In this document: positions 6,401 through 39,444 of the stretch, in pieces
Layout: each line of letters opens with the position of its first letter
Numbering within the stretch: the first letter of the stretch is position 1
Origin: Tubulanus polymorphus
Lineage: Eukaryota; Animalia; Nemertea
Reading direction: 5' to 3'
NCBI RefSeq assembly: GCF_964204645.1
Contig: NC_134036.1
Coordinates: forward strand, 2,232,001-2,296,000
Length of the DNA: 64,000 bases
Program-made: the position numbers and the translations under genes
Notes under the pieces: model-generated
What the model saw: the letters and a program-made list of their open reading frames with translations, nothing else
What the model was told of the DNA's origin: nothing
Database searches by the model: none

Positions 6401-6845
6401 TCTGGCTATTAATCAACATGTGAAAAGACTGACGAGTTTAGGATGGAATAATTGATTAGAGTTTTCATCGTTGTTAAATGGGATACCATTAATTTTGTTG
6501 CGCCGATATCGATGGCAACTTTCAATGACTAGGATATAAAGATTTCGCGATGACATCGCGTGACAAAAAAAAAACGTTATTTATCACGATACAGTTTCGT
6601 TTCGTTTTTGTAAGCGAAAATCGATTGAAAACAAAATGTCGACTTAAAGTCTTAAGATAAAAATGAAAAATTGGAGTTTGAAATGTTTCGTTTATTCGAT
6701 TCAAATTCTAATGGCCCTATACTACAAGAGCTTTATACAGCAGCGAGAGTCGATGTTTAGAACTAACGGCCAGCTTGAAGCCCATATTTGTAAGACAGGT
6801 CTAAAATCAGATGCTTCAGTTGCTCAAAAGTTGGTTAGGGTTAAC

Positions 6846-6959
6846 CAGGACCCAGTTTCACAAAAAGGTTCAACTCTTAAATCGATCTAATTTCTGCATT
6901 AATTCAGTTTATCTTAAATCGATTTAGGCTTTAATCCTTTTTGTGAAACCGGGCCCCAG
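6846..6959. mobile_element. PIF/Harbinger-type MITE, family B, nested in a family C copy
   Basis: TIRs GACCCAGTTTCACAAAAAGG / CCTTTTTGTGAAACCGGGCCC with a CAG...CAG duplication; it interrupts the family C sequence GTTAAC-CAG-TG. Confidence 0.8.
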
Positions 6960-8352: not shown

Positions 8353-8594
8353 TAATGTCTATTTCAACCTGACTTGAGAACATTCCTGGAGGCCTAGCTC
8401 ACTTATTTTTGGTAGTACATACCTGATAAAGGTCTTGATAGGACCAGAAAGGACAGGCAGTCGACCTTAAACATCGTTTTTTAATCCATTTGAAACTGTA
8501 TTGAAGAATATCCAAAAAGTCTTCACTGAAAGAGGTTAAATGAAGAGAAGTGACTCCCCCGGAATGCTCTCAAGTCAGGTTGAAATAGACATTA
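8353..8594. mobile_element. Non-autonomous TIR element with probable TA target duplication (Tc1/mariner-like)
   Basis: TIR of about 31 bp, ATGTCTATTTCAACCTGACTTGAGAACATTCC / GGAATGCTCTCAAGTCAGGTTGAAATAGACAT, bounded by TA on both sides. Confidence 0.78.
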
Positions 8595-10868: not shown

Positions 10869-11001
10869 CTGGGGCCGGTTGCTCAAAAGTTGGTTAAAGA
10901 TAACCGACCGTTAAATACCATAGTAACAATGAAATTTCAATTGTCACCATATCAACTATCCACTGGTTAACTCTAACCAACTTTTGAGCAACCGGCCCCT
11001 G
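10869..11001. mobile_element. PIF/Harbinger-type MITE, family C
   Basis: TIRs GGGCCGGTTGCTCAAAAGTTGGTTA / TAACCAACTTTTGAGCAACCGGCCC, flanked by a CTG...CTG 3-bp duplication. Relatives at 6817-7060 and 49787-49923. Confidence 0.85.
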
Positions 11002-17000: not shown

Positions 17001-19364
17001 CAGTTACGGAGTTTCTAGGGGAAATGATCCAACTTTCTTTTCATTTTAAGTTTAATATCTTTTCAGTTTTTCTGAATTTTTCAAATTTATCAATGTAGTT
17101 GTTCTATTCTAAATAAAAATCACCTGAAAAACGACGATATTTTCAAACTGTTCGTTGAAATTCGTCAAAATTATTTTTTTTTCAAACCAAACTTCAACTT
17201 CGAACGAATCGTTGACAAAACACCTACGTGAATCGAAAATATATTTTTACTCGTCCTAATCCGGGATTAATTCGCGACGCGTGCTCGTATAGGGATCAGA
17301 CGGAGATGATACAACTCCAGGAGTATAGAACCGGTCGCTAGTACTAGATCAAAGCCAATAACAGAAATCCGGAGTTTATACACATATAGGAATAATCCCG
17401 GACACTTCCTTCCTGCATAATCACAGACAAACAGTCGCTGGCATGACAACAGTAATCAGGAAATAGAAACGACTATCATTATTGAAACGAATACCATTAT
17501 TGCATTCGGTATTGCCTCGGTTTGGAAGGGATGGCAGAATGTTGTATCAACAAAACGAAAAAGAATATTTATGATAGACACCATTGAAGTTCATAAGGCT
17601 TTGGAATTCTGATGGTATCACAAATTAAAGGTCTTCTTCGTCGATTGAACGCTGAAATATTCACGGACAAAAATGTGTCTCAATCAGTAATCAAACTTAA
17701 ACATTTCCGTTCAAATTTGTCAGTAATCAAAAAGGTAAGACCCTCAGTAAATCTTCAATGTGGACAAGTGTAGCGGTAATCAAGTAAACCTTGAATATTT
17801 CCGTTCAAATTTATCTGTAAGGACTAAGACCCTCAGTAACATAATTCATGTTTCTGTAACACCTTTCATTTCTGTTCAATTGTCAGTTATCAAGGTCGTA
17901 AGCCCTCCAAATTATTGGATAAATATTTCATATTTCTTTAAGCATTATCAAAATGGATTAGGATTATCGCAAAACGTCGTATTGAAAGGGGAACCTGAAC
18001 TCGACCACGCACTTCTCATCATTGATCACTTTTTTACTCATCCCCTTTGTGTCCGGGCTGTACGTGACGTTACCCCTCCCGCATGACGGACGAAAAATAA
18101 GAAGCGTCATGTCCGAGCCAATATCACTTACAAGTTATCAGAAATAATCCGTAATCAATCAATCATAAGTTTTACAACATCCTCGGACTGTCTTTCAGCC
18201 GACGAGTTACCGAACCACGAAATTCCATTACTTACTGGAAATAGCACATTGATACCTAAATATGGCTTCCCAGATACATCCATTTATGATATCATCTTAA
18301 CATAAAATTGAGTAAGATATAAAGAGACTTCTAGAAAAGATGGCTGCTTCCATAAATAGCACTATGACGTAATGAACTTGACATGAAGATGTAGGATCTA
18401 CCGGTAAAGACGACGTAATAAATCCTCTAATGATGTCATCAATCAAATTCATTTGAAGATGTAGACACTTCAAGACTTATTCCATGAATCCCCCTATGAT
18501 GTCATCAAATTGACGTTGACACTCATAGAAAAGATTAGCTGCCAAAAAATGAAATTGTCCATGACCTAATCAAACTTGCCTCCATAAATCCTTTTGGCGC
18601 TACATAGGCTTAGGTGTAAGACCAGTCTCAGAGCGGCTGTTCTGTCAGCAATCTACGCAATTTTCTTTAAACCAGTTCTAAGATTTAACGTCACGACCAG
18701 TTTAAGAGCGACTTTTCTACGCAACTTAAGACCAGTTCTAAGAACGTCACGATAGTGCCACTGGGCCCTGGAAGATATCGCTAGGATCAATATCAACATT
18801 TAAACGACAAAAAAAAAACTGACTTATGAATTCATCCATTTTTCCTGACAAGAGATTTTTATGAAGTTTATCTATAAATTCTGCTTAAATGATAATCGTC
18901 TGGCGTATCGTCTGCCGTAAATATCGATCCAACTCTTGAGGCGATATCTATCTTGCGACGATCAAGCGGAACAAATTTCCATTAAACGATTTTATTAAAA
19001 ACAATCTCCTTGAAGACAAACTTCATTATAGAAATATTTCCCCTCGGTACCTGACATACAAGCTTTACTTTAATCCAATTCGGTATATTAACAAATACTC
19101 AAGTTTCATCCCCTTGGGCGAAAAGCAACTTCCGATTATCTTAATCCATACTGTGACTTGCGGGCATCAAATTCTTTTTTTTAATCCTGACATCGACAGA
19201 CAGTTGGAAGTAGAACAAATCTCAAATCTCAAATGGAATTTGATGCAATCTCAACTTGATGCAGATGGCATAGAAATTTCGATATTCTTAAGATAACAGT
19301 CAGAAATCAAGTAAAACATGTTTCCTAATACACAGATGGGCAAGGTATCTGACAAGGCTACATG

Positions 19365-19762
19365 CGCGACACATCATCCCCTGGTGGCGATTCACAAAAA
19401 CATGCAGACAGATAACACAATTTCGACAGAAGTCGTCCATCCCACCGGCAAACATTAATATCTTATTCAATTAAATTCAACCAAGTGCTACGTGTGCCAT
19501 CTTAAAAGGCAACTTGAGCGACGGATCATCCCCTGGTGTCGATTTACGCAAACACAGACAGATGCAAACACAATTTCGACAGATGTGATCTCTCCCAGCG
19601 ACCTAATTCAATATCTCATTCAATTAAGTTCAATTTTATTAGCCCAGTGGGACTTGCGCCATCTAAAAGGCTACTTGCAAGACGGATCATCCCCTGGTGT
19701 CGATTAACGCAAACACAGACGGATGCAAACACAATTTCGACAGAAGTGATCTCTCCCAGCCA
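19365..19762. repeat. Tandem triplication of about 155 bp
   Basis: ATCATCCCCTGGTG...ACACAATTTCGACAGA recurs at about 19373, 19525 and 19686. Confidence 0.85.
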
Positions 19763-22700
19763 ACCCCACGAAGATACATTAATCATTGAGTTGCATTACG
19801 GGAAACATGAGATTTCAATAAAACATTGACGACTCATAAACGACTTGAGGAGATTGAGGAGATTGAGGAGCGAGGACGTCACAGTAACGGCTACAATAAA
19901 TAAACAGACGTGACCTGTTTATAACAAACACTGAACGACGCATTGGTCGCTTTACCTTGGACCGTCTGTCCTTCTCAAGATGATGGGATGCTCAATTCTC
20001 ACAGAAAAAAATACTGAGTGACGCATTGGTCGCTTTACCTAGGATTGTCTGTCCTTCTCAAGATGGGACGCTCAACATTGGGCTTCATGATGGAATACTC
20101 AACCATAACGCAAGATAGTAGTATTATTGGGCAATGCTTACCACATGTGCAAAAACTGGTCCTTCAAATAACGTCGGGCTTCACTTGCCAGAGACAGAAC
20201 TTTACCTGGGACTGTCCTTCCTAGGATGATGGGTACTCAACCCTCGCAGAATACGGTAGGATTGGGCAACATGAAATATTCAACCCTAACACAAAATAGC
20301 AGTATTGGGCAATGCTGAACACATATCAGGCATGACGTGAGGTAGCTACATTGGCCCACAGCACTCGCTTGCCAGGGACTGTCACCCTCAACATAATGGC
20401 ATACCCAACTCTAATTCAAGATTGCAGTGCAGGGACATACTCCGACACAAGCTGGCGGTATTGGGCAATGCCATGCCAACGGGTAGTGATATTGGTCCAC
20501 AGCTCTGGTTTGTCAGGATCTGTCCTATCAAACATGTCATACCCGACCCAAACGCAAGATGGTCGCATTGACACATGCAAAGATGCAGGGCAGTGTCATT
20601 GGTCTCAAATACCAGGGACCTTCCTCTCCAAGTAGATTGCATTGGCAATACAATGGTCCACAAAACTCGCTTCCTAGAGGTTGTACTGTCCGATCATTGT
20701 CTACAGTTATATCGCATCCCAGCCTGTGATGCGGTATAACTGTAGGCAATGATAGTGGTGTTGGAAGTGCAGCGACTGCAGCGGCCAAATCCGCGACAAC
20801 AATTTACTGTATGGCTTTTTTTTCTTTGAATACCACGTTTTCTAAGAAATTAAGTCAATTCACCGCGGCAATACTAAGAATCTGTCCGAAGTCGGCATTT
20901 GCCCGCAGCAATAAAACATTGCTTCCAACGCGCCTACCTAGAGTGGATAGGCCAGTATTACTGGCATTTCTACTCTAGCGTGGAACTAGACTCACTTGCC
21001 AGAGACGGACGGCGATAAATATATAAACGAAGGAAATATCAAAAATGAAAAAAGAGACATAGACAATATAAAGCGGGATAGTGAACGTGTTTGGAGAGCA
21101 CTTGACAACTGTTAACGGCGCGCTATCCGTGTCAGTCAGCCAGATGGTCAAATATCATCAACACCGGTACGAGCAGACGATCAATTAGACTTCTGCTCTT
21201 TCGGCAGACGACCGTGAGAGCTACAGTGACGACGAGAACCAATCGTGTGGTCTACTGTTGTCGTTAATAGAGATTGCCGATACAGGTACTAAATGAACAT
21301 GTGTAACTAGTGTGTTTGGTGAACTGGTCAACGATAGCTTCAGTGACTGGAATGATAGCTTTTGAATAAATCATCACAAAGAAAATAATATCAATAACTT
21401 GACTATTAATTTAGTCAACAATATCATTTGATGCTGCGGCAGTACATGTGACCAAAGAACGGATGGTTCAGCCTCTGGACTGTCAGCTGACTTGCAATGA
21501 TCGGGGCGAAACAAACAGAAGATATGCAAGACTATGTGAAACAATCAAGCTGGTTGTTCATACTTTGGGCATTAGGCAAAGTCGATTGCAGAAGTCAATC
21601 CAATTCGGCAGACGACAGCGTTTGGAAAAAGGTCGATGTCCAGCAATGAAACTGACATTCGGAGATAATATGGACGAGATGAGTTGGACGAGGAAAAATA
21701 TTAGTTGCCAATTTTCGACGTGATAACAAAAAAAAGTCTCCCGGACAACCGTTGACGAGGAAACGGATTATTGTAATAAGACAGGAACTGTTACCATGGC
21801 TCGTATTATTGCGACACATTGTCATTCATCCATCTCATCGATGTCCATCGCCGATATTTCGCTGGGGTTTTTTTCTGCTGCTGCTTCTGGTGTGGCAGTG
21901 TCACTAAGTCTGGCGGAGAAGGGCAGACGATGACAAGCCGCGTCTACACTCTATTCTTAAGCCATAACCTTTTCTATTTAGCAATCAGCATCGATCGAGC
22001 GAATCTTCATTTTTTTGCAAACACAAGAATCCACTAGTTCCGAGTCAACACTAATTGATCGGCACCTATTGAATCTAAAGTTGTAGTCTCAAGTTAACTA
22101 AGGCTATATATAAATCGATACCATGTTTCTAATTCTGCCAATTTGAACTAGCCGGCCGACTTTCTAACTTGACCACAATGACTTTCTTTAAAATCATGAT
22201 CAAGTTATTCCTGAAGTTATTCCTGAACAGACGTGGTACTTTTAGAAATGAACTGATTACAAGTTTCATTGCTATTCTACTCTCCGCGTTACTTTTTTGA
22301 GTTATTTGCAAACTTCCGCGGCTAACTCGATTAGTTTATGTGATGCCATTGGGGAACATGACATGGATATATGAATTAACAGTATATGAATTAACAGTCT
22401 ATACTCTATGTGTTGTGCCACAAGAGATTGAATATCGGACAAAATCGGTTGCGTGCGAACAGTTTTTTTCGTCCAACCTCTCCATCGCCGAATTAACAAC
22501 TACAGCGGTTAAAAGGTCGCACGCGATCAAAAGTCCGACGACGCATTTTATCGCTGAATAACTTGCTTAGATCCGTCTGCGAAGAGCTTCCCGCTCGTTC
22601 ATAATGATTCGAAACACGAAACTGCACTCAAATCGTTATGTAATGTTATCGACGGCGGGTTAGAGGTGCAAATTACCGTTTTATGAGTTCCATGGTCGTC

Positions 22701-25700
22701 TGCACGAGACTAGACTGCTAAGAAACGGTGTCAAAACAGTTTGTTACATTATTACCGCTAAGAAACGGTGCATAACGGTTTGTCGCATTGTTATGATCTG
22801 AATTTGAAAATAACTGCTGGTAACGAACGATTACCGAAAATGCTAAGCAACACGACAACGGTTAATCATATTGTTATAGTTTGAATATTTGAAATAACGA
22901 CCCGAGACATCAGTCGGATGTGGAGAGTGATTTGCATCGACAAAAAGGCACAGAAACAGACGGAGGTGAATAAAACGAAGACATTCTGAAAAGAACCTCA
23001 TGAATGCGATATAGATGATCAATACACGGGGACAGAAATGTAAAATTTATAACATCACAAATGGAAAAGATCCTGGCAAAAATGTTGTTCGTCGCAAAAA
23101 TGGCGAATAAGCCCCCGAAACGATGCTTGCTGTTGGTGGCTCCATTTTCACTAACCCCAATATCTAACACAGACGGCAGTGGTGTGGCTTTGAAGGGTTT
23201 TTTCACGTAGCCATCAGTCAATATTGTGTTGACCGTGTTCGAGGCTGTGGTTTGTTAATCACGTTGTCCTCGAGCCAGCTCACTCACTCGCCGCTGCGCA
23301 CTGATGTATTTATTAGGGCGAATTACCGCCCGGTATTGGATCTACTTTGATAACGGCTTATATAGCCGAGATTAGCCTCGGATGAGATTCTAATTACCGC
23401 ACCGGCAGACGACAGTGTGCATGAGTGGACACCGTATAACAGCAACATCAGCAGCAGCAGCAGCAGCTGAGTGGACCTGTTACTGGTACGTACCGGCCCT
23501 TGATGTATATCTCAAGGACGTAAATACGTCCATCATTTTCAGTAGCGTCCATATATACATCCAAACATCAATTTGGTGATGTCATAGGTGGTTTTGTAAA
23601 GGTGGCCATCTTTTCTGGAGGTGGCTTATAACCACTTCGATTCGAAGTTGAGGGTAGATTCGAAGTAGCAGACATATTTGTAAAGACGTTCCAATGTCTC
23701 CACGTCAATTTTGGTTATCTTAGCTTTTATTGCGAGGTCGATATCACCACCTCAATTCTATGGGGTGCATGCATGAAGGTTGCCAACATTTTCCAAAGTC
23801 GATTCTCAACCTGTAGAAATTCTCAAAACAGAGAGAACAGATATCAATTTACTAAGTGTCCATATTATCCAAACTCAAAAGTTTCATGACGTCATAGGGG
23901 GATGTGTGATATGCTTAAACTAAAAACTGTGTTGATTATGAATCGAGTTTTTAAATCGCAAGAAGAAACGCTCTTGAGATTAATGGAAAATCTCTGTCGT
24001 GTTCAGCATTGCGTGAATGTTGAGCTGATGACGATCTCGGTGTAACCCTCCCCCCCCCCTCTCTCCGTGGAGCTGTAGCGAGAGAGCAGCGAGTAGAACA
24101 ACAGACACAACAGGTTCTCGGTGAACCCACTCCCCTAACAGCTGTAGCGGGAGATCAGCGAGTAGAATCGTCAAAATAGGTTCTCAGTGAAACCCCTCTA
24201 CGCGGAGTAGTACAGTCACAGGACCCCCTCTCCCTCTCCTCACAGCTGTAGCGGGACAGCAGCGAGTAGAACAGTCGCAATATATTCTCGGCGAACCCCT
24301 TCCCCTCACAGCTGAAGTGAGGAACAGCAGGTGGAACAGACACAATAGGTTCCCAATCGTCCCATGGCTCCAGTGACATAGATAGCCCAGCCAGGCGATA
24401 AAACAAGTTCTCAATTGAACCTGCGTCACATCACACCGAACTAACGGTTCTCAGAAATCACAATAAAGACACATTCTACAGATTAGAATAAATTGATAAC
24501 AATATTCTAAAAGCTCGATTATAATTTAATACGATAAGATATCGATAATAATAATAACCAAAGCTCGATCGTTTCGTGACGTCACGCCATAGAATCGGCT
24601 CCCTTTCCTCACACAAGAGATACTAGATCAAAACCGTTAACGATATTGATAAATTTCACCCTTTAGAAAAGATATCTCGATATTAAATTATTACGATACG
24701 ATATCAATCAATCGACACTGAATTGTTTGAAGATGTTTGCACCTAGAAAACGAATACTGTCGTCTGCCGAATCGGTCTGTAAACACTCGATTTTCGTCTG
24801 CTTAAAAACAAACAATCGCACGCTATCTAGGCGTAATTACTTTTTATCGCCTGCGCGAAACGGAGATATAGGGAAAAATAATTAATGCGTCTCGATCGAA
24901 GATACTGTATCCAATAAAAAATCCAATATAACTTGTATCCATTTTCATGGACTCATTCATATACAAAATGTCTGAAAGAGTTTCCACAAAAAGGAGACAT
25001 CAATAAAAATATACAATTGGGATTTCTGTATCTAGTTCTAGAAATGGTTGAATCAAAAGAGCTCTAAAATCTATCTGGAAGAGTTTCTACAAAAAGGAGT
25101 CATCAATAGAATTACTCTATTGAAATTATGTTCTGAATAAACTTTTTAGATTTGGAAATAGTTGAATCCAAGGCGTTCTAAAATCATCACATCCATCTGT
25201 GCGGAAAAATGTCCATAAATAAAAAAGTTTAATCCACTTTATATTATTATTAATTTATCAATATTTTTGCGAGATTATTAATTTCGTTCTTTTGCCATCC
25301 ACGAGCATAAATGCTGAACCGGGAGAGAGCGATAGATTGAATGAAATTCAATCTGTCCTGGAAATGGTTGAATCCAAAGAGGTCTTCGAACCTAAAGTAA
25401 CTATACACTGACGTTAAGGCTCTCAGTGACAGAATATAATGTGATCCACGTGACGTCGAGTTTACAATTCTATGACTATAAGAAATTGGAATCGCGAACA
25501 CGTAGGCGTCAAAATATCTTTTCTTTTTGTTAGTAGTGATAAAGAACATATTTCGTATCATCAGTAATTTGAGATATCACCGCATGGTTCTTGAGATATC
25601 GCAGCAGAGTTCTTTTCTCTTCTCAACAGGCGAGATATTCCACGAAGACAGACGACAATGTCGTCAACTCACGACTGGCTTCAACAGGGTGATCGTTTTT

Positions 25701-26958
25701 CCAGAAAGCCGCCGCACCGAAACATCAGACAAGCGAACAAAACCAAGGACAACAGACATTCGTGTCATCCTGGGTCCAGGGCCCAGTTTAACGGAAAACT
25801 TGATTCATATTGACAACTTTACGTTTTCAATATATCAAAATTGAAAAACGAAGATTCCTTTTTTTCACCAAATCTTGATGTTTTCAATTACTTAACCAGG
25901 ATCCGAACGGTTCGAGGTATAAACTATTTCATGAAATAGAAAAACAATTTGTGGACGTGATAATTAGTTTGTTTCCTAAAAGAAAATTCTAAATCGTCTG
26001 GAGGAGAGAATGAGGAACCCTCAAAAAAAGAGTTTATTCACTTGCAATCAGTTACTTTATGTAACCATTAGAAACTTAAATTTGCTCTCATCAAACTCAG
26101 ATTTGATCAGTAAAAATCAAATAATCCTATAAATTGATTAGTTTAATCAATTTTTTGTTTCCTAGAAGATATTCGAATTCTTCCGAACGAGATTAAGGAA
26201 CCTTCGAAAACTAACGTAAGCCCACGGAAGTCAGGGTGGCGTTTTGCCCGCACGGCGACTACTCCGGTCGATAAAGGCTGACTTAAAAGTTTATTGTTGC
26301 CGCATTTCTTAGATACACGTAGTCGAAATACTTCCGACCGTCAATTCCGTCGTCGTCAAGGGAAATTCCAACAATGTCCCTGGCGAAATCGGAATCAATT
26401 TTCGTTTGACGTGTTTTTCGTCGCGGTATCCGTCGGGAATTCTGTCTAGAGCAGACGGCGGCCGGCGACCAATAAAGACACAGCTCCCTCTCAACAATGC
26501 GATACCGGTAACAATGACAACTCATCGAAGCGGTGATGAATATTTGACGGGTTTCCGGTGGCGGGGTCCCGGAAGACGCCGATACAAGTAAAATAAATGG
26601 AACATAACATACCTTCATAAAATATATATACAATTCGTATATAGAATATCTTGGAGGAAAAGCCCTCCTGACAAAGGCAATAAAATATGTAAAAAGGATT
26701 CGATCTCAAAGGTCGAGAGAGAGGAAAATGGAAGAGACAAGAGGAGGCGATTGGAAAATCCTGTACATGAATAAATACATCAGTGCAAAAGTTGTTAAGT
26801 ACAAAAAAAAGGTTTCAGGCAAAAGATGCCATCAAGAACTCACGATGAATTTACACCAAAAACGAAAGAACTACGGCAGGGCAGAAGAAGAGAGGAGATA
26901 AAAATGGCGGAATGATACGTCTTAAACTTTACAAAAACGACAAAACTATGCATGTGGC

Positions 26959-27190
26959 AGAGGTATAGATAGAGGTATAGATAGAGGTATAGATAGAGGT
27001 ATAGATAGAGGTATAGATAGAGGTATAGATAGAGGTATAGATAGAGGTATAGATAGAGGTATAGATAGAGGTATAGATAGAGGTATAGATAGAGGTATAG
27101 ATAGAGGTATAGATAGAGGTATAGATAGAGGTATAGATAGAGGTATAGATAGAGGTATAGATAGAGGTATAGATAGAGGTATAGATAGAG
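26959..27190. repeat. Perfect 12-bp minisatellite (AGAGGTATAGAT)n, about 19 copies
   Basis: Direct inspection. Confidence 0.97.
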
Positions 27191-28107
27191 GAGAATGAGA
27201 TTGAACATTTACTTTCAGAAAAGTCGGAAGAAAGCAAAATGGCGGAAACTCTCAGGTGCATCATTGTAAATACGCGAGTGCAGTCAAAAACGTGTTTCAG
27301 ATGGTGTCTAGAAATCGCGGCGAATTTACAACAAAATGAAACAATGGAAGTGACAGAGGAAGGAGAGAAAAATTAAAGTGTGTTATGAACTAATGTAACT
27401 GGGAAGAGAGCGCGAAATGTAAGGAGAGTCTCAGGTGTTCTCGTAAAAATAACCGAGCCATAAACATCGCGAAAATATGAATATTTAATGCATCTATTAA
27501 CGATAACAGAACGCACAAAAATGACTTTATCAATGAAACGTAATTGATATTTCACGTTGCCGTTACGCTTACGTTCAACAACCGACTAGAGAAGCGGCTG
27601 CTTCGCCAAGCGTTAAGATACATTACGGGCCGTTAGCAACGACGGCGTTATTACGTTAATGTGATTACAAACGTTGATCTTGTCTCAACGTTACCGCCTG
27701 ACAGATGCTGGCGTAGTCTATTAACGTCAAATAACGTCGAATGATACGTATACGTACACGCCAACGCTGCGCGTCAAGTGAGCCGTCCCGATATTATCCC
27801 GAAGCGTTTTCCTTTCATTTTTTTAAAGTACGATGATACATTACGTTACGTTACGTTACGTTAAGTAACGTATACGCCTAAATTGATGTTATTTTCTTTA
27901 CGGATATACGTCTAAAAAAGGGTTTTTTTTGCACGATACGCGAAGTCGTTACGATACGTTACGACGTTAAGTAACGTACACGGGCGGAAATGCTGATATT
28001 ACGCGGTGTACGATACGTCTGATTAAATTTAGTTTGTTGCGTCCTAACGCAGGTTTAATATCCGGGATGGAAAAGATTTTTAAGACGTAGCTTATTTACC
28101 AATTCGT

Positions 28108-28484
28108 GAGGCTATACAAATGGATACCTGGTTTCTCTTAATCGGCCGGGGGTCACTTTCATAAACTGCTATATATGAATTTTTAATCAGTTCATTTCTA
28201 TAACTGTCGGGTCTGTTATTGTTAGCTTGACCATGATTTTAAAGAAAGGTACCGAAGCCAAGAATAAGGCTGGAATAGAATGATACCTTGATTCTCCTAA
28301 TCAGCCGGGTCATTTTTGTAAACTGCAATAGAATTTGTAATCAGTTAATTTCTATAACTGCCGGGTTTTTTTTAGCTTGATCATGATTTCCTATAAATAA
28401 TGTACAAGTACATAGGCGGCTGGCTAGGTCAACTTTTAAACTCAGCAGAAATGAGAGAAACAAGGTATCAATTGTTTTAGCCTA
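28108..28484. mobile_element. Family G element with duplicated left half
   Basis: Two tandem left arms (28108 and about 28267) and one right arm, similar to 3279-3495. Confidence 0.72.
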
Positions 28485-28637
28485 ATCACATTTGAGAGAC
28501 TAAGTCTACAAATTTATCTAGAAAAGTGAACGCATGTGATTTCAGCTTATGGATTCAGCTTGCAGCTCGTCACAGGGCGTGGCGTGTACGTTGGGGGTTG
28601 GGGGAGTTTGATTGGTTGAAAATGTTAAAATTTGTTC

Positions 28638-28721
28638 ACTTACCTGAATTTAAGTTTCGTTCAAATTCGAGAAATAAAATATGAAAAGAGAAGAAAGAAA
28701 AAGATCATTAGTCATTGCGCT
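28638..28721 (-). promoter_or_regulatory. Candidate recursive splice site (zero-length exon)
   Basis: Minus strand reads TGACTAAT (branch point), TCTTTTTCTTTCTTCTCTTTTCATATTTTATTTCTC, then TTCAG|GTAAGT. No other AG for about 74 nt upstream. Confidence 0.65.
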
Positions 28722-29454
28722 AGACAGAATACATTGGACGACATTGGACAAATACGTTGGACAAATACATTGTAAATTTGCTAGATAAATACATTAGACA
28801 AAATACAATGATTGCTTCATGTCAGTTATAAATCATGGACTACGATAAGTTCAAACTTATCCATCAAAACAAAAAAAATATGGAAAAAATGATGGTAAAT
28901 AAAGTGAGATAATTGATAATGAGCAAGAGTGGGAAAAAAGGATACAGAGAAGGGAGAGAGGAGTAATGGATGAGAAGGGGAGAGAGGGGGAGAGTGGGGC
29001 GATAGAGGGAGAGTGGACAATGAGAGTGAGAGAGGAAAAGAAGATAGTGGGAGATGGAGGGAGAGAGAGGGGGTGAGGAAGAGTAGGAGAGAGATAAGGT
29101 TGAACGAATGACTCCACATTCGATCACGCACTGAACTACGTTTAGCTATATTTGTCTAAGATTAAGCCATTAGCGGAGTTTACTCAGACTAAGTCAACAA
29201 CTGCAACCGGGAGTTTGAGACCCGACCGTACATCCGGGTTACATGTATGTAGTGCAACTTGGCGACAAATTTATGTGTTATGTGCAAATTTGTTCCCGAG
29301 TCTATTAGTTATCGGTTACCAGGTACGAGTTCCGGTGAATAGTTACTCCTACTAGGAAATCGTAATCTTCACCCCATACTAATAGTCCGACTTGCCGGGT
29401 TGTGCCATGGACGTACTCTTGTTTATGGGTCCATGGTTGAAGATAATGTCATGA

Positions 29455-29730
29455 ATGGTGCTGCTACCATAGCTGTGAGGGGAGGGGAGGTTATTTGAAG
29501 GTGACGTCACTAGGGTGCCGCTGCCATAGCTGTGAGGGGAGGGGAAGTTGTTTGAAGGTGACACCACTGGGTGCTGATACCATAGCCGTGAGGGGGGAGT
29601 TATTTGAAGGTGACGTCACTAGGGTGCCGTTACCATAGCTGTGAGGGGAGGGGAGGGTATTTGAAGGTAACGTCACCTAGTAGGGTACTGGTCTGCCAGG
29701 GGAGGGGAAGTTATTTGAAGGTAACCCCAC
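29455..29730. repeat. Tandem repeat of about 60 bp
   Basis: CCATAGCTGTGAGGGGAGGGGAGGTTATTTGAAGGTGACGTCACTAGGGTG recurs 4-5 times. Confidence 0.9.
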
Positions 29731-31149
29731 TAGCAAGATCTTCCAAATGGACCAGCATATCACTGACTCTGGTTCTTGTCGTTTCCCCAGTGGTTTGCGT
29801 TCGACGGTCAATGACTTCTCCTTTCGGCAGACGAACAAATGGAAATATCGGACGAAAAATCATGTCGCTTGAACTCCACTGGGAGCGGAGCTTGTTACCG
29901 GCTACCAAGCGGCTGATATACGGGTTAATGTCGCGGCTGATGACGCTAATGGTGCTCTCAAATCGGGTTACAGATTGAGAAAATTTGTATTTTCGACAGA
30001 TTCACCCAGTTATTGTAGATAGGTTGCAGCAAAAACACGGCATAGATGGTTATATAAAAGTGCTTCAAAGTGCTCTGAAATCCAGTTCCAGATCGAGTTA
30101 ATCATAGCGTGCAAGCTGGTATCTCGCATTTTCGATATTTTAACTGATAGGTTGCAGCAGAAAAAAAGGCATTACATGGAATTATAATCTCACAGTATTT
30201 ATTTTAGCAAAAACATAGAATATGAAGGCAGAAATTTAGATACAGGACCATTTCACAGCAGCAATTTGATGATGTCATAGGGAGACTTATGTAGGCTGCC
30301 ATGTTTTCTGTAAGCGTCTATATCACAGCATGAATTTGATGATGTCATATGGAGAATTGAGGCAGCGGCCATTTTTTCTAGCGGCTGAATTATTGAAGTC
30401 ATATGGGGATTTGAGAGGGCGGACATACATATATGACTATAAGCGGTTTTCAGAGGTAATCATTCCTGTCAAAAAGAAATCGGCCACCTTTTCTGCAAGG
30501 GTATCAAAGATGCGCAGACTTCATGGAGGCTGTTATGGGTAGGATATTCGTTACTGCAAGGTTCATTCAACTACGTAATAGAAAGTGTTCCACGCAGAAA
30601 CAGACGCTCTAAGAGACATCGCTCGGTGCTTCAAAAACAAGTCCCGCTTGTCGAACTTCTTAACGTCTTAAGATTCTCGACGTAAGCCTTAGCATTTACG
30701 ACGTTAAGCTTTTCTTTCCGTTCCTGAGCGGATCAACATCTTCAGATCCGGTTCCAGATCAAAGCTGGAGGCTTTAGGGGAGATTTCCTGTTCCACTCGG
30801 ACCAGGGTTTGGTTGCGAACTGGTGCAAATAGTTCGTACACGAATAGCGCGTGCGGTATTCCCAGGGTACGTGAACCACACCTGAGCTAGTCAAATCTGG
30901 AATGTAGGTTGATATGTTTCTAGGCGCTTAGAGGATGAAAGTGTAAAAGGAAAGTCTGACGATGGAAAAGGTTTATCCACAGGAGTTGGGGAAAGCAGAA
31001 TAAATGAACCACGCCGGAGCAAATCTTCTCATCTGGAATATGAGTAAATATATTTTCGGCGCGTAGAAGATAGGAGAAAGTGTAAAAGGAAGGTTTATCC
31101 ACAGGAGTTGGGGAAAGCAGAATACCTGAACCACACCGGAGCTAGTCAC

Positions 31150-31293
31150 CTGGCTCCAGTTGCACAGTCGTGACTTAAGTCCAAAAGTGGTCCTAAATGT
31201 TTAGACTGGTCTTAATTTGTTAGATTGGCGATATAACTAAGTTAGTCTTAGACTGGTCTTAAGTCTAAGCCATGACTTTGCAACCGGCCCCTG
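31150..31293. mobile_element. MITE, family D
   Basis: Same internal sequence as 43119-43262, with a CTG duplication; an empty paralogous site is present near 30885-30930. Confidence 0.85.
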
Positions 31294-32035
31294 GAATGTA
31301 GGTTGATATGTTTCTAGGCGCTAAGAGAATGCGAGAAAGTGTGGGAAGGGCTGACGATGAAAAAGGTTTATCCACAGGAGTTGGGGAAAGCAGGAGGGAA
31401 AAGATAAACGTAGGGTAAGGGTGGGTGCGAAGATGAGACTACGGATGATGAACGGGAGGTTAACAGAGATGACAATGAAATGGAACAAAGTGCAAGGAGA
31501 GTAGAGAGGAGAGTGTTTAGAATAGGAGAGGGCATAGAATAGAATCAAGGCACGAATAAGGGCGAGAGGATAACGCGAGAGTGAGAGAGGGAAAAATTGG
31601 AGCCAGAATCAGTGAACAAGTCGAATGCAATATGGACACGTATCAATTCCTTCATGAAAGTCATTTTTTCGCGTCCTTTCTTCTTTTTCGTTGCTCGTCG
31701 AGGATGAAAACAAAAAGGAAACGAACGCGAAAGGGAAAGGACAAGAGGAATTAATGCATAAAGATCAGCTACAGCACCAACAGCAGCAGCAGCAGCAGTA
31801 GACCCCGGAGCGGATTGAGCTTTATTGAGACACTACGTGTGATAAAGAGAGAGGGGCGAAACTTATACTCTGCAATAGATCAGAGCAGATTTGTTCAAAA
31901 ATTGACTTATCGACAACCGAGATAGAACTGTAGACACGACAGCAAGTGCGATGGGTGGAACGGAGGATAGAGACAGAACAGTGGGATGAAATATCACATC
32001 TTTTTAAAGTTATTACCAGTCTATAAAACCAGACC

Positions 32036-32178
32036 TTGGGTCAGTTGCACAGTCGTGACTGAAGTCCAAAGTTGTCTTAAATCTAAAGACTGACCTCAAT
32101 TTGTTGGATTGGCTTTAGAACTAAGTTGGTCTCAGACTGGTCTTAAGTCAAATGTCACGACTGTGCAACCGACCCCAG
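32036..32178. mobile_element. MITE, family D
   Basis: GGGTCAGTTGCACAGTCGTGAC...GTCACGACTGTGCAACCGACCC. Confidence 0.8.
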
Positions 32179-33247
32179 GAATTTATTGCGTTAAAAACGA
32201 CGTGAACCTTTTCTTTCTCTCCCAATCTTCACTGGGTATCTTTTCCTTGACCATTTCTGCGATATCATAAACAGTGTTGATGATTAAAAGCGACAGATGA
32301 GGAGCGATTGGGATTAAAACGAAATTAAAGGTTCGAACATGACGGAATTAACGGACTTAAGGGAAGTAGTGGAAATAGGGTGTGAAGAAAAGTGTAATAA
32401 ATGTAGAATTGGTCGTCGAGAGTGCGATGTGGGAACGGGTAGAGTCTAACAACAGAAGAATCGATGATTACAAAAATAAGGAAAATAAAGAAACGGCCCG
32501 AGTAGAACCAAATCACGTTTAAACGATAGATAGCAGCATTACACTATTGATCTATTACACTATGAATTACGGCCATTTGTTAGTGCGTTGGCAAATTCAT
32601 TGCCAGTACCATTGAAGCCCAGGACAGAAAATTGGCAATTTATTCTCTCGGCTTTCTGCTGTGTGTTGCAATGTGTAACGGCCACACACGGGAACAACAG
32701 CAGCAGACGATATCATCTATTTCTGTTTGAGATTATATGAAAGATTAATATCAGTCGGTATTTCATTAAGCGGCAGACGATAGATAGATAGGGAGTATGA
32801 ATAGAATCAGTCTCTAACTGCTCTCTCCTTCTCCCTCCCTCACTTTCCCATTTCTCATTTAGATTCATTCAATAGGGGAATCACTGTCCGCTACCGTGTA
32901 CAATAAATACTTGTAGACATTTATTAACTCGTGCTCATAATAAACGATTTGTCTATGGTCATTACGAGTTTTGTATGAATTCATTAATCACCCATCAAAT
33001 GAACAAGAAAGTCCATGGTTATTTCGGCATCAATTCAGCATAATGCATATGAAATGATAGTTTTGTTGGAACTCAAATACACGGAAAAAATCAGCACAAC
33101 TAGCATTAATGCCTACTAGCAATTCCCTCAAACAGCCCACAGTATTTGTTACATCGGCATTATGAGTGAATAGCGAACTAGACACGCGACTGGTCACCAC
33201 CGACAATACAAACTTTCATACTCAGCCAGCCTGCCAACACGTCCAAC

Positions 33248-33325
33248 ACGGTTCGATGGTCTAGTGGTTAGGGCCTAGGGCTGGCATGTAAGAGGTTACA
33301 GCTTCGAGTCCCGATATGCTATATT
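33248..33325 (+). pseudogene. tRNA-like relic / tRNA-derived SINE head
   Basis: A-box TGGTCTAGTGG and B-box-like GCTTCGAGTCC at tRNA spacing, followed by a T-run; stems are degenerate. Confidence 0.5.
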
Positions 33326-33739
33326 TTTTCCTGGATCGTTTTTAGATTAGCACCGAATTTTTTCTTCCATTACGGGAAAATGAGATATTTTCAAAGATGT
33401 CAATATTCAAATAAGGTTTCGGAGAAATAAAAAAATAAAAACAATAATTTTTTTCTGCTTCATTTAAACAATAAAACAGAGGGGATTGTATCAGCAGCAG
33501 TAGCACCCGTCTTAGGAATCAAGAGCCGTCTCAAATCAAACCCGGTGACGAGAAGGTGAAGAAAGGCAGAAAGACAGACGAACGTCTCAAGTAGGAGGTG
33601 GAATACGTCCTTACATCAGCAGACGACGGATTAACTGCGATGGGAGATTAATTCGGCGTAAAGAACCAAACACAACAAAACATCACAAAATATGATGATG
33701 GACTTAAATCTCGGGATGATAACATTCCTGAGTACAGCT

Positions 33740-34072
33740 GTTGCTACTCGTGGTTCTGGTGCTGCTACTGGTGGTCCTGGTGCTGCTGCTGCTACTGGTG
33801 GTTCTGGTGCTGCTACTGGTGGTCCTGGTGCTACTGCTGCAACTGGTGGTTCTGGTGCTGCTACTGGTGGTCCTGGTGCTACTGCTGCAACTGGTGGTTC
33901 TGGTGCAGCTGCTATCGGTGGTCCCGGGGCAGTTGCTGCTAATGGTGGTCCTGGTGCTGCTACTGGTGGTTCTGGTGCTGCTACTGGTGGTCCTGGTGCT
34001 GCTGCTACTACTGGTGGTTCTGGTACTGCTGCTATCAGTGGTCCCGGGGCAGTTGCTGCTACCGGTGGTTTT
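33740..34072. repeat. Triplet-based minisatellite (GGT/GCT/ACT/CCT units)
   Basis: Repeating GGTGCTGCTACTGGTGGT(T/C)CT. Confidence 0.9.
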
Positions 34073-35941
34073 GCAGCAATAGCTGTTGTTGTTGCCGCTT
34101 ACAATCCCGAGTCCTGTTGGTCAAGCGAAGACTTTGAGACAGAAAAAAGATTCTTTTGAGAGATGAGAATAAAATGTGAGCAATTTAAGTTAAAGAGGAG
34201 AGAAACGATGAGGGAAGAGGAGAATGAAAGATGAGGGAAATGAGGAATTAATTTACGAGGAAACAGGTCAGAGATTAGAGAATGGTGCGATAATAACGAG
34301 GGGGTAAGGAGAGAGGATGTGATACGCAGTAAGAGATGGGAGTAGTTGGGGGGAGTGAGTGGGAGATCGTTTCTAAAAACATCGCCTCGAGGTGTAGGCA
34401 AAGTTCTTTTTTATCATGTGTAGTGTAAAACATAAATCTTTAAAGGATAACATGACATACCGGCCGATTAAACACACTCGAATTCAAACAGACAACTTGT
34501 TATTTTAGATAAAACACGTGAAAACCACCATCAAAACAAAACTTGAACCGACAAAAAAAAAGATTTTACGCTCGAGAGAAATAGAATAAAGACGCTTAAC
34601 GTTTTTACAGTTATATGTTTGCAAGGAGGGTGAAACGAAGGCAGAGAGAGAGAGAGAGAGGGAGGGAGACAGATATAGGCTAGCAACGGCTAGAAACAGG
34701 TCAGACGAAGGACTCTGATAAATTCCCCAGCGTAAATTTTGATTTCATCTAGATTTAGTTACACGTTTTCTGTGTTTTGCATTTATTAACTGAGAATTGG
34801 GTCCTTGCTAAACGTTAGGAGGAAGGAGACAGATATAGGCTAGCTACGGCTAGAAAGAGGTCAGAGGAAGGACTTTGATAAATTTCCCAGGCTAAATTTT
34901 GTTATCATCTTAGTCTAGTTACGCGTTTTGTTTTTCTGCATTTATTGCTTCAGCAATTACAATTGAGCGGAGATTTTTAATTATCAAAAGCCTTGGAAAT
35001 CCGGGGCACAAATCTTGTTTATCGGAAGCACTTGCAACTCGATAATCTGATTAATAGTCTTGTCACATTTTCTTAATTAAATATGCGAATTATGACGTCA
35101 TTCAATGGAACAGAATCCTTCAAAGGAAGCCCAATAAATATACAATTTACAATTAAGGATTTATTTCTCGATTTGTCATTATCGACTTCAAAGGTTACAT
35201 TGTTACAATGAAGGTCAGTGATTCGACTTTTGGTGAACAACATAATCAAATGAAGCCCTATAGAAGCGGGAGAGGCAGAGATAAGTAGGAAAGTTGAAAG
35301 TGTAAATAAAGATGAAAAGGTCCGAGAGGGGAAATAAGGTCACACTATGATTTTCATAGACAAATGACCGTCTGATATCGGTATCGTAAAAGCGACGATG
35401 AAATGAAATAACTAGAAGACGTTTTGTCGCAATTCTATGATTTTGAAAATGGTCAGTGTAGATCTTCTAGTCTTTCTCATTTTGATCGAGGGTTTGTACG
35501 GTATCAATAGCAGACGGTCAATAGTCTATGGAAGCCATGGGTTTTTCGTTTTGAAGTCCCTGTTAGGATCGATTTTCGCAATAAGTGAAAACGAGGAAAC
35601 AGAATATAAAATCTCCACACTTTCTTAGACCAGATAAATTCGTGGAGAACTATCTCAGCTAGTAATACTAGAAGCGATAAGAGCTGACTCGCGTATACAT
35701 CAGACACTGATAAGAAAGTGATAAGAGATCAGGATAAAACAGTATAAATAGGCGAATAGTGTTATGATTATATTAGTAAGCCCCCACAGAGGCCTTTAAT
35801 TGGTCAGACCAAGAGAAATGTCACAAAGGCCGCAACAGTAGCCTTTCAGAAACATGACACAAATTCCACAACAGAAGCCTTCCTTCGGTAAGACTTGGAC
35901 ACGATATGAAGGCCCAAACAATAGCCTTCCATTTATCAGAC

Positions 35942-36073
35942 CTGGGGCCGGTTGTATAGTCATAGCTTAGACTTAAGACCAGTCTAAGACCAACTATAGC
36001 CAATCTAACAACACAACATTAGTCTTAAGTTTTAAGACCAATTTTGGAGTCACGACTGTGCAACTGGTCCCAG
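35942..36073. mobile_element. MITE, family D (opposite orientation)
   Basis: GGGCCGGTTG...CTTAAGACCAGTCTAAGACCAACTATAGCCAATCTAACAA...GTGCAACTGGTCC. Confidence 0.8.
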
Positions 36074-36287
36074 GAGCTCAGACCTAGGGACTTGATGGGT
36101 AGAAGCATTGCCAAAGAAGGCCTCGCAGTAACCGCAAAGTCCGCTGAGAACTCGGGACAATGACCAGGCATGGATAAGGTTCAAGAAACACGCATAGAAA
36201 ATGAGAAGCTGATACGTATTAATGCAACCGTTAGCTTCATCAATAACAATACTTGGTATTCAAGTGGTGCAAAATATGTAAGGGGCA

Positions 36288-36360
36288 ATAACCGAGAGTT
36301 GATGCACTTGGTTATCAGACTCCCATTACTGAGTTCACGGGTTCGAATCCTGCAATATGT
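36288..36360 (+). pseudogene. tRNA-like relic / SINE head
   Basis: Degenerate A-box TGATGCACTTGG and perfect B-box GGTTCGAATCC. Confidence 0.4.
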
Positions 36361-38299
36361 TTCTTTAATCAATATCAACAAAGCTTAGTCGTTTCTCTCG
36401 AACTGAGGACCTTAACAACAGTGGAACATGTGGAAATGTGGATTTGCGTGGTATTGTAAGTGGACTTTAGGATGATTTAGCAGCGGGACGAACAATGAAA
36501 GTGGAAGAGTGGATATGTGTGGAAGAGTTAAGAATGGACACACTATCCTTTCTCTATTGATTAAGCAGCTATTGCAACAGTGAAAGCATTCGGCTATCAA
36601 ACACTATTGACAAATGCTATGATTGATGGAAATAACCTCTACAACACTTTAACAGAGATAAAAGGGGTACTATATCAGATCTGCTGACATTCCAGGTTCT
36701 CCTTGACGGGATCTGGCAAGGACACAATCAACGAAAATGTAGAAAATTTGAGAAGTTGCAGCCCGCAATGGCGGCAATACTATAGACACGTTCAGAAAAG
36801 AAGGATTTTATTATTTTACCCCCTTGGGGCCCGCTTAGCCATCGTGAAATTGTCGGTAGGCGCTTCTGGGGACTCTTAAATTGTGGCTACATGCTTAAAT
36901 CCCCCTATGACATCATCAAATTGAGATGTGGTGATATAGGTACTTCTAGAAAAGATGGCTGCCTTCACCGATCACCCTATGACATCATCGAATTGATGCG
37001 GCAATAAACAGATAATGATTTGGCAATTGGTGGAACGCACTAAATCATGAAAACGAATTTCAAAGTTTAGAAAGAAAGTAAAAAGTAATTTTGCAGTCGA
37101 GAAAATCTATAAGCGGTTTCGTAGCAACGGTAACAATGTGGGCGGATGTAGAGGAGAAATCGAGAACAGACTTTAATCGAGCGACAAGTAAATGACACTC
37201 GTCGTTAAACATTAGCAAAGAAAGATTCGTCGTCGTCGTCTCATCTGCGACGGACGGACCGAAAATGATCCGCGTGCGCAAATAAAACCAAAAAACAAAC
37301 AAGAACCGATGATATCGATCGAGGAATCGAGGTTATAAACTGTTCGGGGTTCAAGGACGGTGTGGATCGGTAGGGGAGAGAGATGCGCGAGTATGTTGTT
37401 GTTGGAGCAGAGAGAGATAGAGATAGAGAAGGGAAGAAAAAAGATTAATGATGACTTTAATCGTGTTTTTTATGTTCGGCTACTTTCCCCGTGTAGTATC
37501 GTCAGCTATGCATAGTAAATTATTCGGATCTGTGATTTATTCATCTAGTGAACGGTTTGAAAACTCAACGGCCGTACATTGTTGCGAGGTTACTAACCGC
37601 AACGGCAGTGAATACGATGATGAGTAGATTGAGTTATATCTAGTTAGACAGTAATGCGAGTTTACAATTTAACTCAAGGATACTTTATTTAACAAGGTGA
37701 AAAGTCGAAGGTTTAGTTTTAAGAAATACTGATCGAGCCTTTAGACAGGTTGAGGTCATCCATTAAGCCCGGTATTCTTTTTTTACGCTAACTTTTTGTA
37801 AACAACTATTAGACTTGATGAAGAGTGAAAGCCAGTAAATGTTAAACTTTCCACAATGAATAGAATCTGGTAGTTGGAAGAATAAATTGAACCAGAGTTA
37901 TTTCATGGTTTCGATAAACGACGTAAAATTTACGACAATTTATAGACATACGACATACAACACCTTACACACAGGTACAAAAAAATATCAAACAATATTT
38001 CAATCAAAGGATTATCATACATCAATTAACCAACCAATCAATCAATCAATCAATATCGACCCATAAAATGATTTCAACCTTCAATATATTAAATTGAAGG
38101 GTTATTATGAATGAATCAAATCAATCAATTAATCAATGTACCAATAAAAACGATATTACGCCGATATCTCGCTACATTTTCAAGCACTTCGAAAAATCGT
38201 TTGGCAAAATTAACAAAAACATCTTTTACGTTATTTCCGATTTAGCGAGATTACGCCTCAGGCAAAAACCTTTATTAGATCACTGTATGAAATACTTAC

Positions 38300-38566
38300 T
38301 TCCGTATCTTTTGCCGATATTCTGCTCGTAAGCCCTGACTAAATCCGCCTTCGGCGACGAACTAATTTTCTGCAGATGGTTATAAAAATCCGTCCTGAAT
38401 CTCTTGTGTTTTTTCAAGATTTTGATGATGGCGCTCATAGCTAGGTAACAGTAGCCCATAGACTTACTGGTTTGTCCTTCCGGGTCATAAATTCCGAACA
38501 GACGAGTCCAACCGTAATGATCCATAATAGCGATCAACGTGTCGGCCAGTATCGTATGATGGGTCC
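38300..38566 (-). CDS. Coding exon 2 of the same receptor (267 nt, phase 1-1)
   Basis: Acceptor CGAATAG|GG at 38567/38566 continues the frame: (G)THHTILADTLIAIMDHYGWTRLFGIY...CYLAMSAI...NIGKRYG, including the HYGW motif of NPR ectodomains. It ends at a consensus donor GGAA|GTAAGT (38300/38299), at the position where NPR-type genes have a phase-1 intron before the 'IVILC' strand. Confidence 0.88.
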
Positions 38567-38619
38567 CTATTCGATATATCGATATACATGAATATTTTGA
38601 TATCTCATTTTTGAAATTT

Positions 38620-38654
<35 letters not shown>

Positions 38655-38942: not shown

Positions 38943-39444
38943 CTATTCGCGTCAGAACTTTATATTCGGTCGATTTATTCTCGTCGAAGTCGTTAGCGAA
39001 CGCGCCCGATGTTATCAGCGGTATCTTCCAATCGAGCGTCGAGTATCGAGCTACGGGGGCCATCGCGTAATCGCAGATCGGACCGAAAAACACGTCTGCG
39101 GCGTTGTTCATAAAAAACCTGAACGCCCTGACCGGTGCTTCCCCCTGGGAGCATTTACTGTCCTCGTATTTAACCTCGAGTTCGTACTCGGGTAGGATTC
39201 CCATCCGTTTAACGGTTTCGATGCCGATCTGTATCGCCGGCGAAACGGAACGGATATTCACGAAATAGTGCTCCGCGCGGGGAAATAGCGCAGCGATACG
39301 GATCGTTCTACCGCGCGACCGATTCACGCACGGTCGCATTATGTGTAATCCTCCGCCGCTAGAATCGGCGCGAACTAGTTCCAAGCGAGCGTTGACGAGT
39401 ACGCATAAAACGATGACGTATTTCACAGCGATTATTAACGACAT
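38943..39444 (-). CDS. Coding exon 1 of a natriuretic peptide receptor / receptor guanylyl cyclase-like gene (signal peptide + N-terminal ANF-receptor periplasmic-binding-fold domain)
   Basis: ORF 38842..39444 has a hydrophobic signal peptide (MSLIIAVKYVIVLCVLVNA) and family motifs PAIQIGIETV, YEDSKCS, DVFFGPICDYAMAPVARY, WKIPLITSGA and EYKVLTRIG. Similarity stops at the donor ATAG|GTACAT (38943/38942, phase 1). Confidence 0.92.

What the first reader, a model, noticed from the sequence alone, without database searches (positions are those of the whole stretch)
28638..28721. Candidate recursive splice site (zero-nucleotide exon) 9.7 kb into the giant receptor intron
Seen: on the gene's sense (minus) strand there is a consensus branch point (TGACTAAT), a pyrimidine tract of about 35 nt and an AG-free zone of about 74 nt. 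The first AG is directly followed by a perfect donor: TTCAG|GTAAGT (junction 28644/28643). Known: juxtaposed 3'/5' sites of this form are the ratchet points by which Drosophila and some vertebrate long introns are removed stepwise. Inference: this intron is spliced recursively. To my knowledge this is poorly documented outside insects and vertebrates and in this receptor family.
Basis: partly seen in the sequence, partly recalled or inferred. Interest (0 to 1): 0.82.

Follow-up and report, generated by a model that had tools for sequence, protein, structure and literature searches.

The report
Ratchet sites in giant receptor intron
A ribbon-worm receptor gene with swappable front ends has a 187,000-letter intron carrying four back-to-back "intron end / intron start" signals that probably let the cell cut it out in steps, as flies do, but they are built differently from the fly signals and no RNA was available to show they are used.

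Summary
The motif is present as described and is not chance. The genome is the nemertean Tubulanus polymorphus. The site lies in a 187,253-nt intron that RefSeq isoform X1 spans from exon end 38300 to a constant exon far outside the window. That intron holds four YAG|GTAAGT sites (window 28643, window 251, two further on), all on the sense strand with 74-168 nt AG-free zones; the antisense strand has none. They fail two fly ratchet-point hallmarks: the branch motif lies at -57 to -68 (fly -21 to -36), and none has TT at -6/-5. Instead the pyrimidine tract ends 26-37 nt early, in an acceptor look-alike lacking AG, about 30 nt after the branch motif: a microexon with a dead acceptor. The host is a receptor guanylyl cyclase with 3-5 alternative N-terminal cassettes and one shared constant region; same-species RefSeq isoforms show this layout in molluscs, Lineus and horseshoe crab. 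Best reading: recursive splicing (about 0.6). No RNA could test use; cross-species conservation of the sites was not shown. The scan noted similar sites earlier in other introns of this genome (unchecked), and such motifs were already predicted in sea urchin.

The parts
28638..28646 (-). Juxtaposed acceptor and donor CAG|GTAAGT, junction 28644/28643 (candidate ratchet point 1)
   Evidence: first AG after a 74-nt AG-free zone
28707..28714 (-). Branch-point consensus TGACTAAT, A at 28708 (65 nt before the junction, 28 nt before the end of the acceptor look-alike)
   Evidence: use as branch point inferred
28681..28704 (-). Polypyrimidine tract ending in TTTTCAT (28687-28681), an acceptor look-alike without AG
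28644..28680 (-). 37-nt spacer (microexon-sized body, AG only at its end; out of frame and with a stop if included)
246..319 (-). Candidate ratchet point 2: junction 252/251, CTGAT at -68 and a weaker AACTAAA at -56, tract ending in TTTTCCG 26 nt before the junction, 75-nt AG-free zone
38943..39444 (-). Cassette 3, exon 1: hydrophobic N-terminus (likely signal peptide) and first part of the ANF_receptor domain
38300..38566 (-). Cassette 3, exon 2; ends in phase-1 donor A|GTAAGT, joined in RefSeq X1 to the constant exon at C12:2083046
1..38299 (-). First 38 kb of the 187,253-nt intron (continues to C12:2083047; sites 3 and 4 at C12:2161821 and 2112379; cassettes 4 and 5 inside it)

Best explanation
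The site is a recursive-splicing ratchet point. SHOWN: gene layout, intron size, four sense-only sites, their anatomy. INFERRED: a transcript from cassette 3 is spliced from 38300 to the AG at 28644; the junction (exon end GGAA plus GTAAGT) recreates a donor like the original one, and the process repeats at three more sites, removing the intron in pieces of 9.7, 28.4, 70.4, 49.4 and 29.3 kb before the constant exon. Transcripts from cassette 4 would use sites 3 and 4, from cassette 5 site 4. MORE SPECULATIVE: the site is recognised as if it were a microexon. SF1/U2 and U2AF bind branch point, tract and AG-less look-alike, U1 binds GTAAGT 26-37 nt downstream, and the second step takes the first AG after the branch point, which is the one abutting the donor, so zero nucleotides are added. 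This would replace the downstream cryptic exon used by fly and vertebrate sites.
For: Four of four YAG|GTAAGT in the intron carry full upstream acceptor signals, antisense none. Dead-donor control pattern has 6 genome-wide hits against 40 with GTAAGT (many of the 40 are a repeat family). RefSeq X1 and X2 join cassettes 3 and 4 to the same 975-aa constant part with nothing inserted. Branch-like A lies 28-30 nt before the end of the look-alike at sites 1, 3, 4 (CTRAY) and at site 2 (weaker AACTAAA, read), and 27-31 nt at four unique sites elsewhere, the fly branch-to-acceptor peak being -30. Ordinary acceptors of the same gene mostly have the tract abutting the AG. Apparent true microexons of about 19-43 nt with TTTTCAG and CAG|GTAAG appear in the same genome. 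No GTRAG donor within 400 nt after site 1. Intron size and number of sites are close to fly examples (luna 108 kb, five sites).
Against: No junction read, lariat or saw-tooth: no RNA run holds the locus. Fly hallmarks not met. The 70- and 49-kb steps are long against the fly mean of 18 kb and maximum of 64 kb. No such site in 10-14 kb after gastropod cassettes, in a short-intron Lineus paralogue or in the 6-kb Capitella intron apart from one weak TAG|GTAAGG, though the true giant orthologous introns could not be read. Looser genome-wide patterns were not enriched over their reversed controls (46 v 74; 13 v 14), and the look-alike motifs were picked after seeing the sites.
Confidence: 0.62

Rival explanations
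1. Real non-coding microexons with non-AG acceptors: splicing lands after TTTTCAT or TTTTCCG, includes 26-37 nt and leaves through CAG|GTAAGT, giving poison isoforms destroyed by NMD.
For: Branch point and tract are spaced canonically to the look-alike, not to the AG. In C. elegans TTTC can drive splicing at non-AG acceptors (PMC4484395). All bodies shift frame or carry a stop.
Against: Non-AG acceptors are rare in animals (own knowledge); strict absence of AG in every body is needed by a scanning model, not by this one; RefSeq X1/X2 lack the inserts.
Confidence: 0.13
2. The GTAAGT is the donor of an unannotated non-coding first or internal exon, or a trans-splicing joint, giving receptors that lack the cassette.
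For: RefSeq X3 (961 aa) starts inside constant exon 1, so some 5' piece without a cassette is modelled; similar short isoforms exist in many molluscs. Variable/constant loci can use trans-splicing (sDscam, PMC9258826).
Against: A branch consensus, 35-nt tract and 74-168 nt AG-free zone are intron features not expected inside an exon; every possible upstream exon ending at 28644 has weak tracts and a phase-1 stop; the anatomy repeats four times.
Confidence: 0.11
3. Non-catalytic decoys: the sites bind U2AF, U2 and U1 to shield the long nascent RNA from premature cleavage (telescripting) or to steer splicing past downstream cassettes, without being cut.
For: Each segment holds 12-55 AATAAA; two same-strand GPCR genes and two cassettes lie inside the intron; U-rich runs follow the donors.
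Against: U1 shielding needs only a donor; it does not explain the branch point, the AG-free zone or a YAG directly before the donor.
Confidence: 0.1
4. Chance or repeat-borne match without function.
For: A dispersed repeat in this genome ends in CCAGGTAAGT and inflates genome-wide counts.
Against: Site 1 is single-copy; four of four on one strand; expectation 0.002-0.03.
Confidence: 0.04

Closest known systems
Drosophila intronic ratchet points (Ubx, kuz, luna; Duff et al., 10.1101/006163; Pai et al., PMC6110457; PMC8605326)
   Same: AG|GTAAGT in series inside a very long intron, sense strand only, strong pyrimidine tract, nothing added to the mRNA.
   Different: Branch motif at -57 to -68 rather than -21 to -36; no TT at -6/-5 (99.5% in fly); tract separated from the AG by a 26-37 nt spacer after an AG-less acceptor look-alike; no clear downstream cryptic-exon donor at three of four sites; longer steps; use untested.
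Vertebrate RS-exons (Sibley et al. 2015, as reviewed in PMC8911335)
   Same: Recursive site in a long intron, donor regenerated after the first splice.
   Different: Vertebrate sites rely on a downstream RS-exon donor; here only site 4 has one (CAG|GTAAGG 191 nt on).
Computed RP-site enrichment in large introns of sea urchin and insects (PMC2773006)
   Same: Sense over antisense excess in introns over 50 kb (sea urchin 8.2-fold); density here about 2 per 100 kb, like fly (2.2).
   Different: No lophotrochozoan was included; anatomy upstream of the AG was not described in the passages read.
Variable-first-exon / constant-exon clusters (protocadherin, UGT1, chelicerate sDscam); C. elegans gcy-28
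   Same: Tandem 5' cassettes, each ending in a phase-1 donor, joined to one constant region. gcy-28.c and .d have separate promoters, different starts and a common end (PMC9249223).
   Different: Here the cassette is the N-terminal half of a natriuretic-receptor-type ligand-binding domain; no paper on this layout in molluscs, nemerteans or chelicerates was found; orthology to gcy-28 and its exon structure were not tested.

Membership tests
Recursive splice site (ratchet point) | Acceptor AG directly followed by a strong donor inside an intron | tested here: met
   CAG|GTAAGT at 28644/28643 within the intron spanned by RefSeq X1
Recursive splice site (ratchet point) | Long intron, sense-strand excess | tested here: met
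   187,253 nt; 4 sense, 0 antisense
Recursive splice site (ratchet point) | Junction reads to the site, recursive lariats, saw-tooth coverage | not testable with these tools
   No RNA run holds the locus; contigs laid on cassette 5 and site 4 behaved as DNA, no joints
Recursive splice site (ratchet point) | Conservation of the site in related genomes | tested here: inconclusive
   No congener available; orthologous giant introns not retrievable; none in short flanks read
Drosophila-type ratchet point | TT at -6/-5 of the acceptor (196 of 197 fly sites) | tested here: not met
   0 of 4 sites here, 0 of 5 elsewhere
Drosophila-type ratchet point | Branch point at -21 to -36 | tested here: not met
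   CTRAY at -65, -68, -64, -57/-68; predicted, not mapped; the A of TTCAT at -39 could be an alternative at site 1
Drosophila/vertebrate RS-exon | Short cryptic exon closed by a downstream donor | tested here: inconclusive
   No GTRAG within 400 nt after sites 1-3; one at +191 after site 4; weak donors cannot be excluded
Receptor guanylyl cyclase (NPR-A/B type) | ANF_receptor, transmembrane helix, kinase-homology and cyclase domains | tested here: met
Variable-cassette / constant-exon gene | Several paralogous 5' cassettes joined in the same phase to one constant region | tested here: met
   X1 and X2 use cassettes 3 and 4 with identical 975-aa remainder; one cyclase region on this stretch; same pattern in RefSeq models of 12 other species
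Variable-cassette / constant-exon gene | Own promoter for each cassette, cis-splicing shown on transcripts | not testable with these tools
   Only predicted RefSeq proteins seen; their read support is not visible here

The most novel reading that the evidence does not exclude
Ribbon worms use a distinct class of ratchet point that defines itself: a microexon whose own acceptor is disabled (TTTTCAT or TTTTCCG), so that U2AF and U1 can sit 22-37 nt apart and first-AG selection yields a zero-nucleotide exon without any downstream cryptic donor. A chain of these carries alternative ligand-binding cassettes of an ancient variable/constant receptor guanylyl cyclase across 30-190 kb (perhaps 340 kb) to the shared exons.
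Probability: 0.3. Interest if true: 0.82.

Novelty: new variant of a known kind. Interest (0 to 1): 0.62.

Why it matters
How a spliceosome recognises a zero-length exon, where U2AF and U1 would overlap, is answered in flies and vertebrates by a downstream cryptic exon. These sites suggest a second solution and a simple origin for ratchet points (loss of a microexon's acceptor), testable with a minigene. They would also extend recursive splicing to Spiralia. Separately, the host gene shows a protocadherin-like way to vary the ligand-binding half of one receptor cyclase, with two cassette classes older than the mollusc-nemertean split, which bears on how these animals read several peptide ligands through one cGMP output.

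Tried and rejected
Reads: one lay only, at most 6,000 letters; exon end 38300 and the site are 9.7 kb apart, so I laid L013:1-5900 (cassette 5 plus site 4, 1 kb apart). X1-X3 covered exon and intron alike, no joints; X5 had nothing. RNA folding of the four sites: no structure beyond shuffles (z 0.1 to 0.85), so no hairpin bringing tract and AG together is supported. Coding microexon rejected (frame shifts or stops). A private exon 3 for cassette 3 rejected: constant ectodomain exons match only at C12:2080-2083 kb in the 264 kb read. Repeat origin rejected for site 1. Loose genome-wide patterns gave no excess over controls. The original gcy-28 paper was not held. The big protein search was used once because the word search could not reach full-length relatives.

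Full report
Observation. On the minus strand, TGACTAAT lies at 28714-28707, a pyrimidine-rich run follows, there is no AG for 74 nt, and the first AG is followed by GTAAGT at junction 28644/28643. The stretch is single-copy in the genome. The window holds only two YAG|GTRAG, this one and one at 251, both on the minus strand and built alike.

Organism and gene. A protein from the neighbouring region matches a RefSeq protein of Tubulanus polymorphus, a nemertean, at 100% on a contig of the same length. Window exons 39444-38943 and 38566-38300 encode the first half of an ANF_receptor domain. Five such N-terminal pieces lie head to tail on C12 (near 2427, 2319, 2271, 2181 and 2114 kb), but only one cyclase region was found, at 2071-2073 kb (counts are lower bounds). 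The three cassettes I could read all end in a phase-1 A|GTAAGT, and the constant region starts at a phase-1 acceptor at C12:2083046. The constant ectodomain exons have no second copy in the 264 kb read. RefSeq isoform X1 joins the window's exon 2 to that acceptor and X2 joins cassette 4 to it; the remaining 975 residues are identical and nothing is inserted. The intron is therefore 187,253 nt. These are predicted models whose read support I could not see. Cassettes 1 and 2 were not read and are assigned by homology and position only.

The layout is old. RefSeq isoforms from one species share 99.5-100% of the constant part but only 22-49% of the first 225-275 residues in Argopecten, three Mytilus species (two of three pairs checked per species where lengths allowed), Mercenaria, Mya, Ostrea, Saccostrea, two Haliotis species, Biomphalaria, Lineus and Tachypleus, always switching at the same I/V-IVLCA junction. 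A tree of 26 cassettes splits them into two classes (100/99), each with molluscs and nemerteans; the window's cassette groups with a Lineus cassette (Tachypleus rows fall in one class; three long branches are unsure). The Solemya orthologue spans 235 kb. C. elegans gcy-28 has isoforms with separate promoters, different starts and a common end (PMC9249223), so the principle has a precedent; I found no paper on it in these phyla.

A series of four. The intron has four YAG|GTAAGT on the sense strand (C12:2260643, 2232251, 2161821, 2112379) and none on the antisense strand. All four have AG-free zones of 74-168 nt, a tract of 13-15 pyrimidines in 15, and CTRAY at -57 to -68. They were found by the junction alone, so the upstream features are independent of the selection. 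With loose cut-offs 4 of 140 acceptor-like sites carry the donor against about 0.03 expected; with tighter, after-the-fact cut-offs 4 of 12 against 0.0024; shuffles give 0.017. The steps are 9,656, 28,392, 70,430, 49,442 and 29,333 nt. A strict pattern has five hits in the genome, two here; a looser one has 40, against 6 when the donor is spoiled, but a repeat family accounts for many of the 40.

Anatomy. Fly ratchet points have TT at -6/-5 in 196 of 197 cases and branch points at -21 to -36 (10.1101/006163). None of the four meets either. Here the tract ends 26-37 nt before the junction in TTTTCAT (site 1) or TTTTCCG (sites 2-4), each one base away from the TTTTCAG acceptor seen at this gene's constant exon, and the branch-like A lies 28-30 nt before that end (at site 2 through a weaker AACTAAA read). 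Five unique sites elsewhere have a long AG-free zone, a tract ending in TTTCAT and a 22-35 nt body; four have CTRAY 27-31 nt before it. Three of these four had already appeared in branch-containing searches, so this is partly circular. TTTTCCGGT before YAG|GTAAG occurs only in this intron, suggesting the three sites share an origin, perhaps with the cassette duplications. Apparent ordinary microexons of the same shape but with a real TTTTCAG exist in this genome. Looser patterns for the class were not enriched over reversed controls, so its genome-wide extent is not established. No special RNA fold was found.

Mechanism. Most likely the intron is removed stepwise: exon 2 is spliced to the AG at 28644, the junction recreates a donor, and this repeats to the constant exon (inference from the known fly pathway). 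Fly and vertebrate sites are first recognised through a short cryptic exon closed by a downstream donor (PMC8605326, PMC8911335); only site 4 has such a donor. I propose that the spacer does that job: the acceptor machinery binds at the look-alike, U1 binds the ratchet donor a microexon's length away, and the second step picks the only AG available. This step is inference. The main rivals are real microexons with non-AG acceptors (possible in C. elegans, PMC4484395), donors of non-coding 5' exons or trans-splicing joints (RefSeq X3 lacks a cassette; sDscam), and non-catalytic decoys.

What could not be shown. No listed run is on record as RNA and holds the locus. The one lay allowed was placed on cassette 5 and site 4, which lie 1 kb apart; three runs behaved as DNA and showed no joints, the putative RNA run had nothing. 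No matching site was seen in the 10-14 kb after gastropod cassettes, in a Lineus paralogue with short introns, or in Capitella apart from one weak match; the long orthologous introns were out of reach.

Novelty and score. Recursive splicing is known, and motif enrichment was computed for sea urchin and insects (PMC2773006). No lophotrochozoan case surfaced. Earlier, unchecked notes of this scan report similar series in other introns of this genome; they are leads, not support. The displaced-tract anatomy and the setting in a conserved variable-cassette receptor make this a new variant worth a direct test. Interest 0.62, held down by the lack of RNA and conservation evidence.

Noticed in passing
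G000:C12:2070070-2427102 (minus); window 38300-39444: Receptor guanylyl cyclase with 3 confirmed and 2 probable alternative N-terminal ligand-binding cassettes on one constant region; same layout in RefSeq isoforms of molluscs, Lineus and Tachypleus; two ancient cassette classes. Worth its own study.
   Followed up: yes
window 246-330 (minus); C12:2161821; C12:2112379: Three further ratchet-like sites sharing TTTTCCGGT, a combination found with GTAAG nowhere else in the genome.
   Followed up: yes
G000:C9:12379770, 12410319, 12418790 (plus); C7:15526103 and 15561473 (minus); C9:11957928; C2:22007877; C4:25291129; C1:7760451: Other sites of similar build, some in same-strand series 8-35 kb apart; host genes not identified.
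   Followed up: partly
L004:6898-7827 and L004:4087-5034 (minus); window 61123-62208 (minus): Single-exon rhodopsin-type GPCR genes on the same strand: two inside the giant intron, one between cassettes 2 and 3. Host transcripts must read through their polyA sites.
   Followed up: partly
C12:2105319-2105260: RefSeq models cassette 5 as a separate 290-aa protein (XP_074661507) ending in a short terminal exon here; could be a secreted or truncated form or a modelling artefact.
   Followed up: partly
P0293, P0170 and similar 820-860 aa isoforms: Cassette-less RefSeq isoforms starting inside constant exon 1 recur in many species; their first exons may mark donor use at intronic sites.
   Followed up: no
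window 38567-38942: Intron splitting cassette 3 has the same 8 letters at both junctions; cassettes 4 and 5 and most relatives are single-exon. Its acceptor is weak, and upstream-cassette transcripts would have to skip exon 2.
   Followed up: partly
window 39444 v RefSeq X1 start: RefSeq X1 starts at residue 81 of the exon 1 reading frame and so lacks the likely signal peptide; X2 is likewise cut short at its N-terminus.
   Followed up: partly
many contigs, e.g. C4:5058846, C3:5404675, C11:11047279: Dispersed repeat ending in TTCCCTGATTTCCAGGTAAGT, a ready-made acceptor-donor pair; a possible source of new ratchet points and a confounder for genome-wide counts.
   Followed up: no
G000:C6:11007728-11007801 (plus): Same look-alike layout but with first AG 6 nt before the donor: a possible 6-nt microexon.
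   Followed up: no
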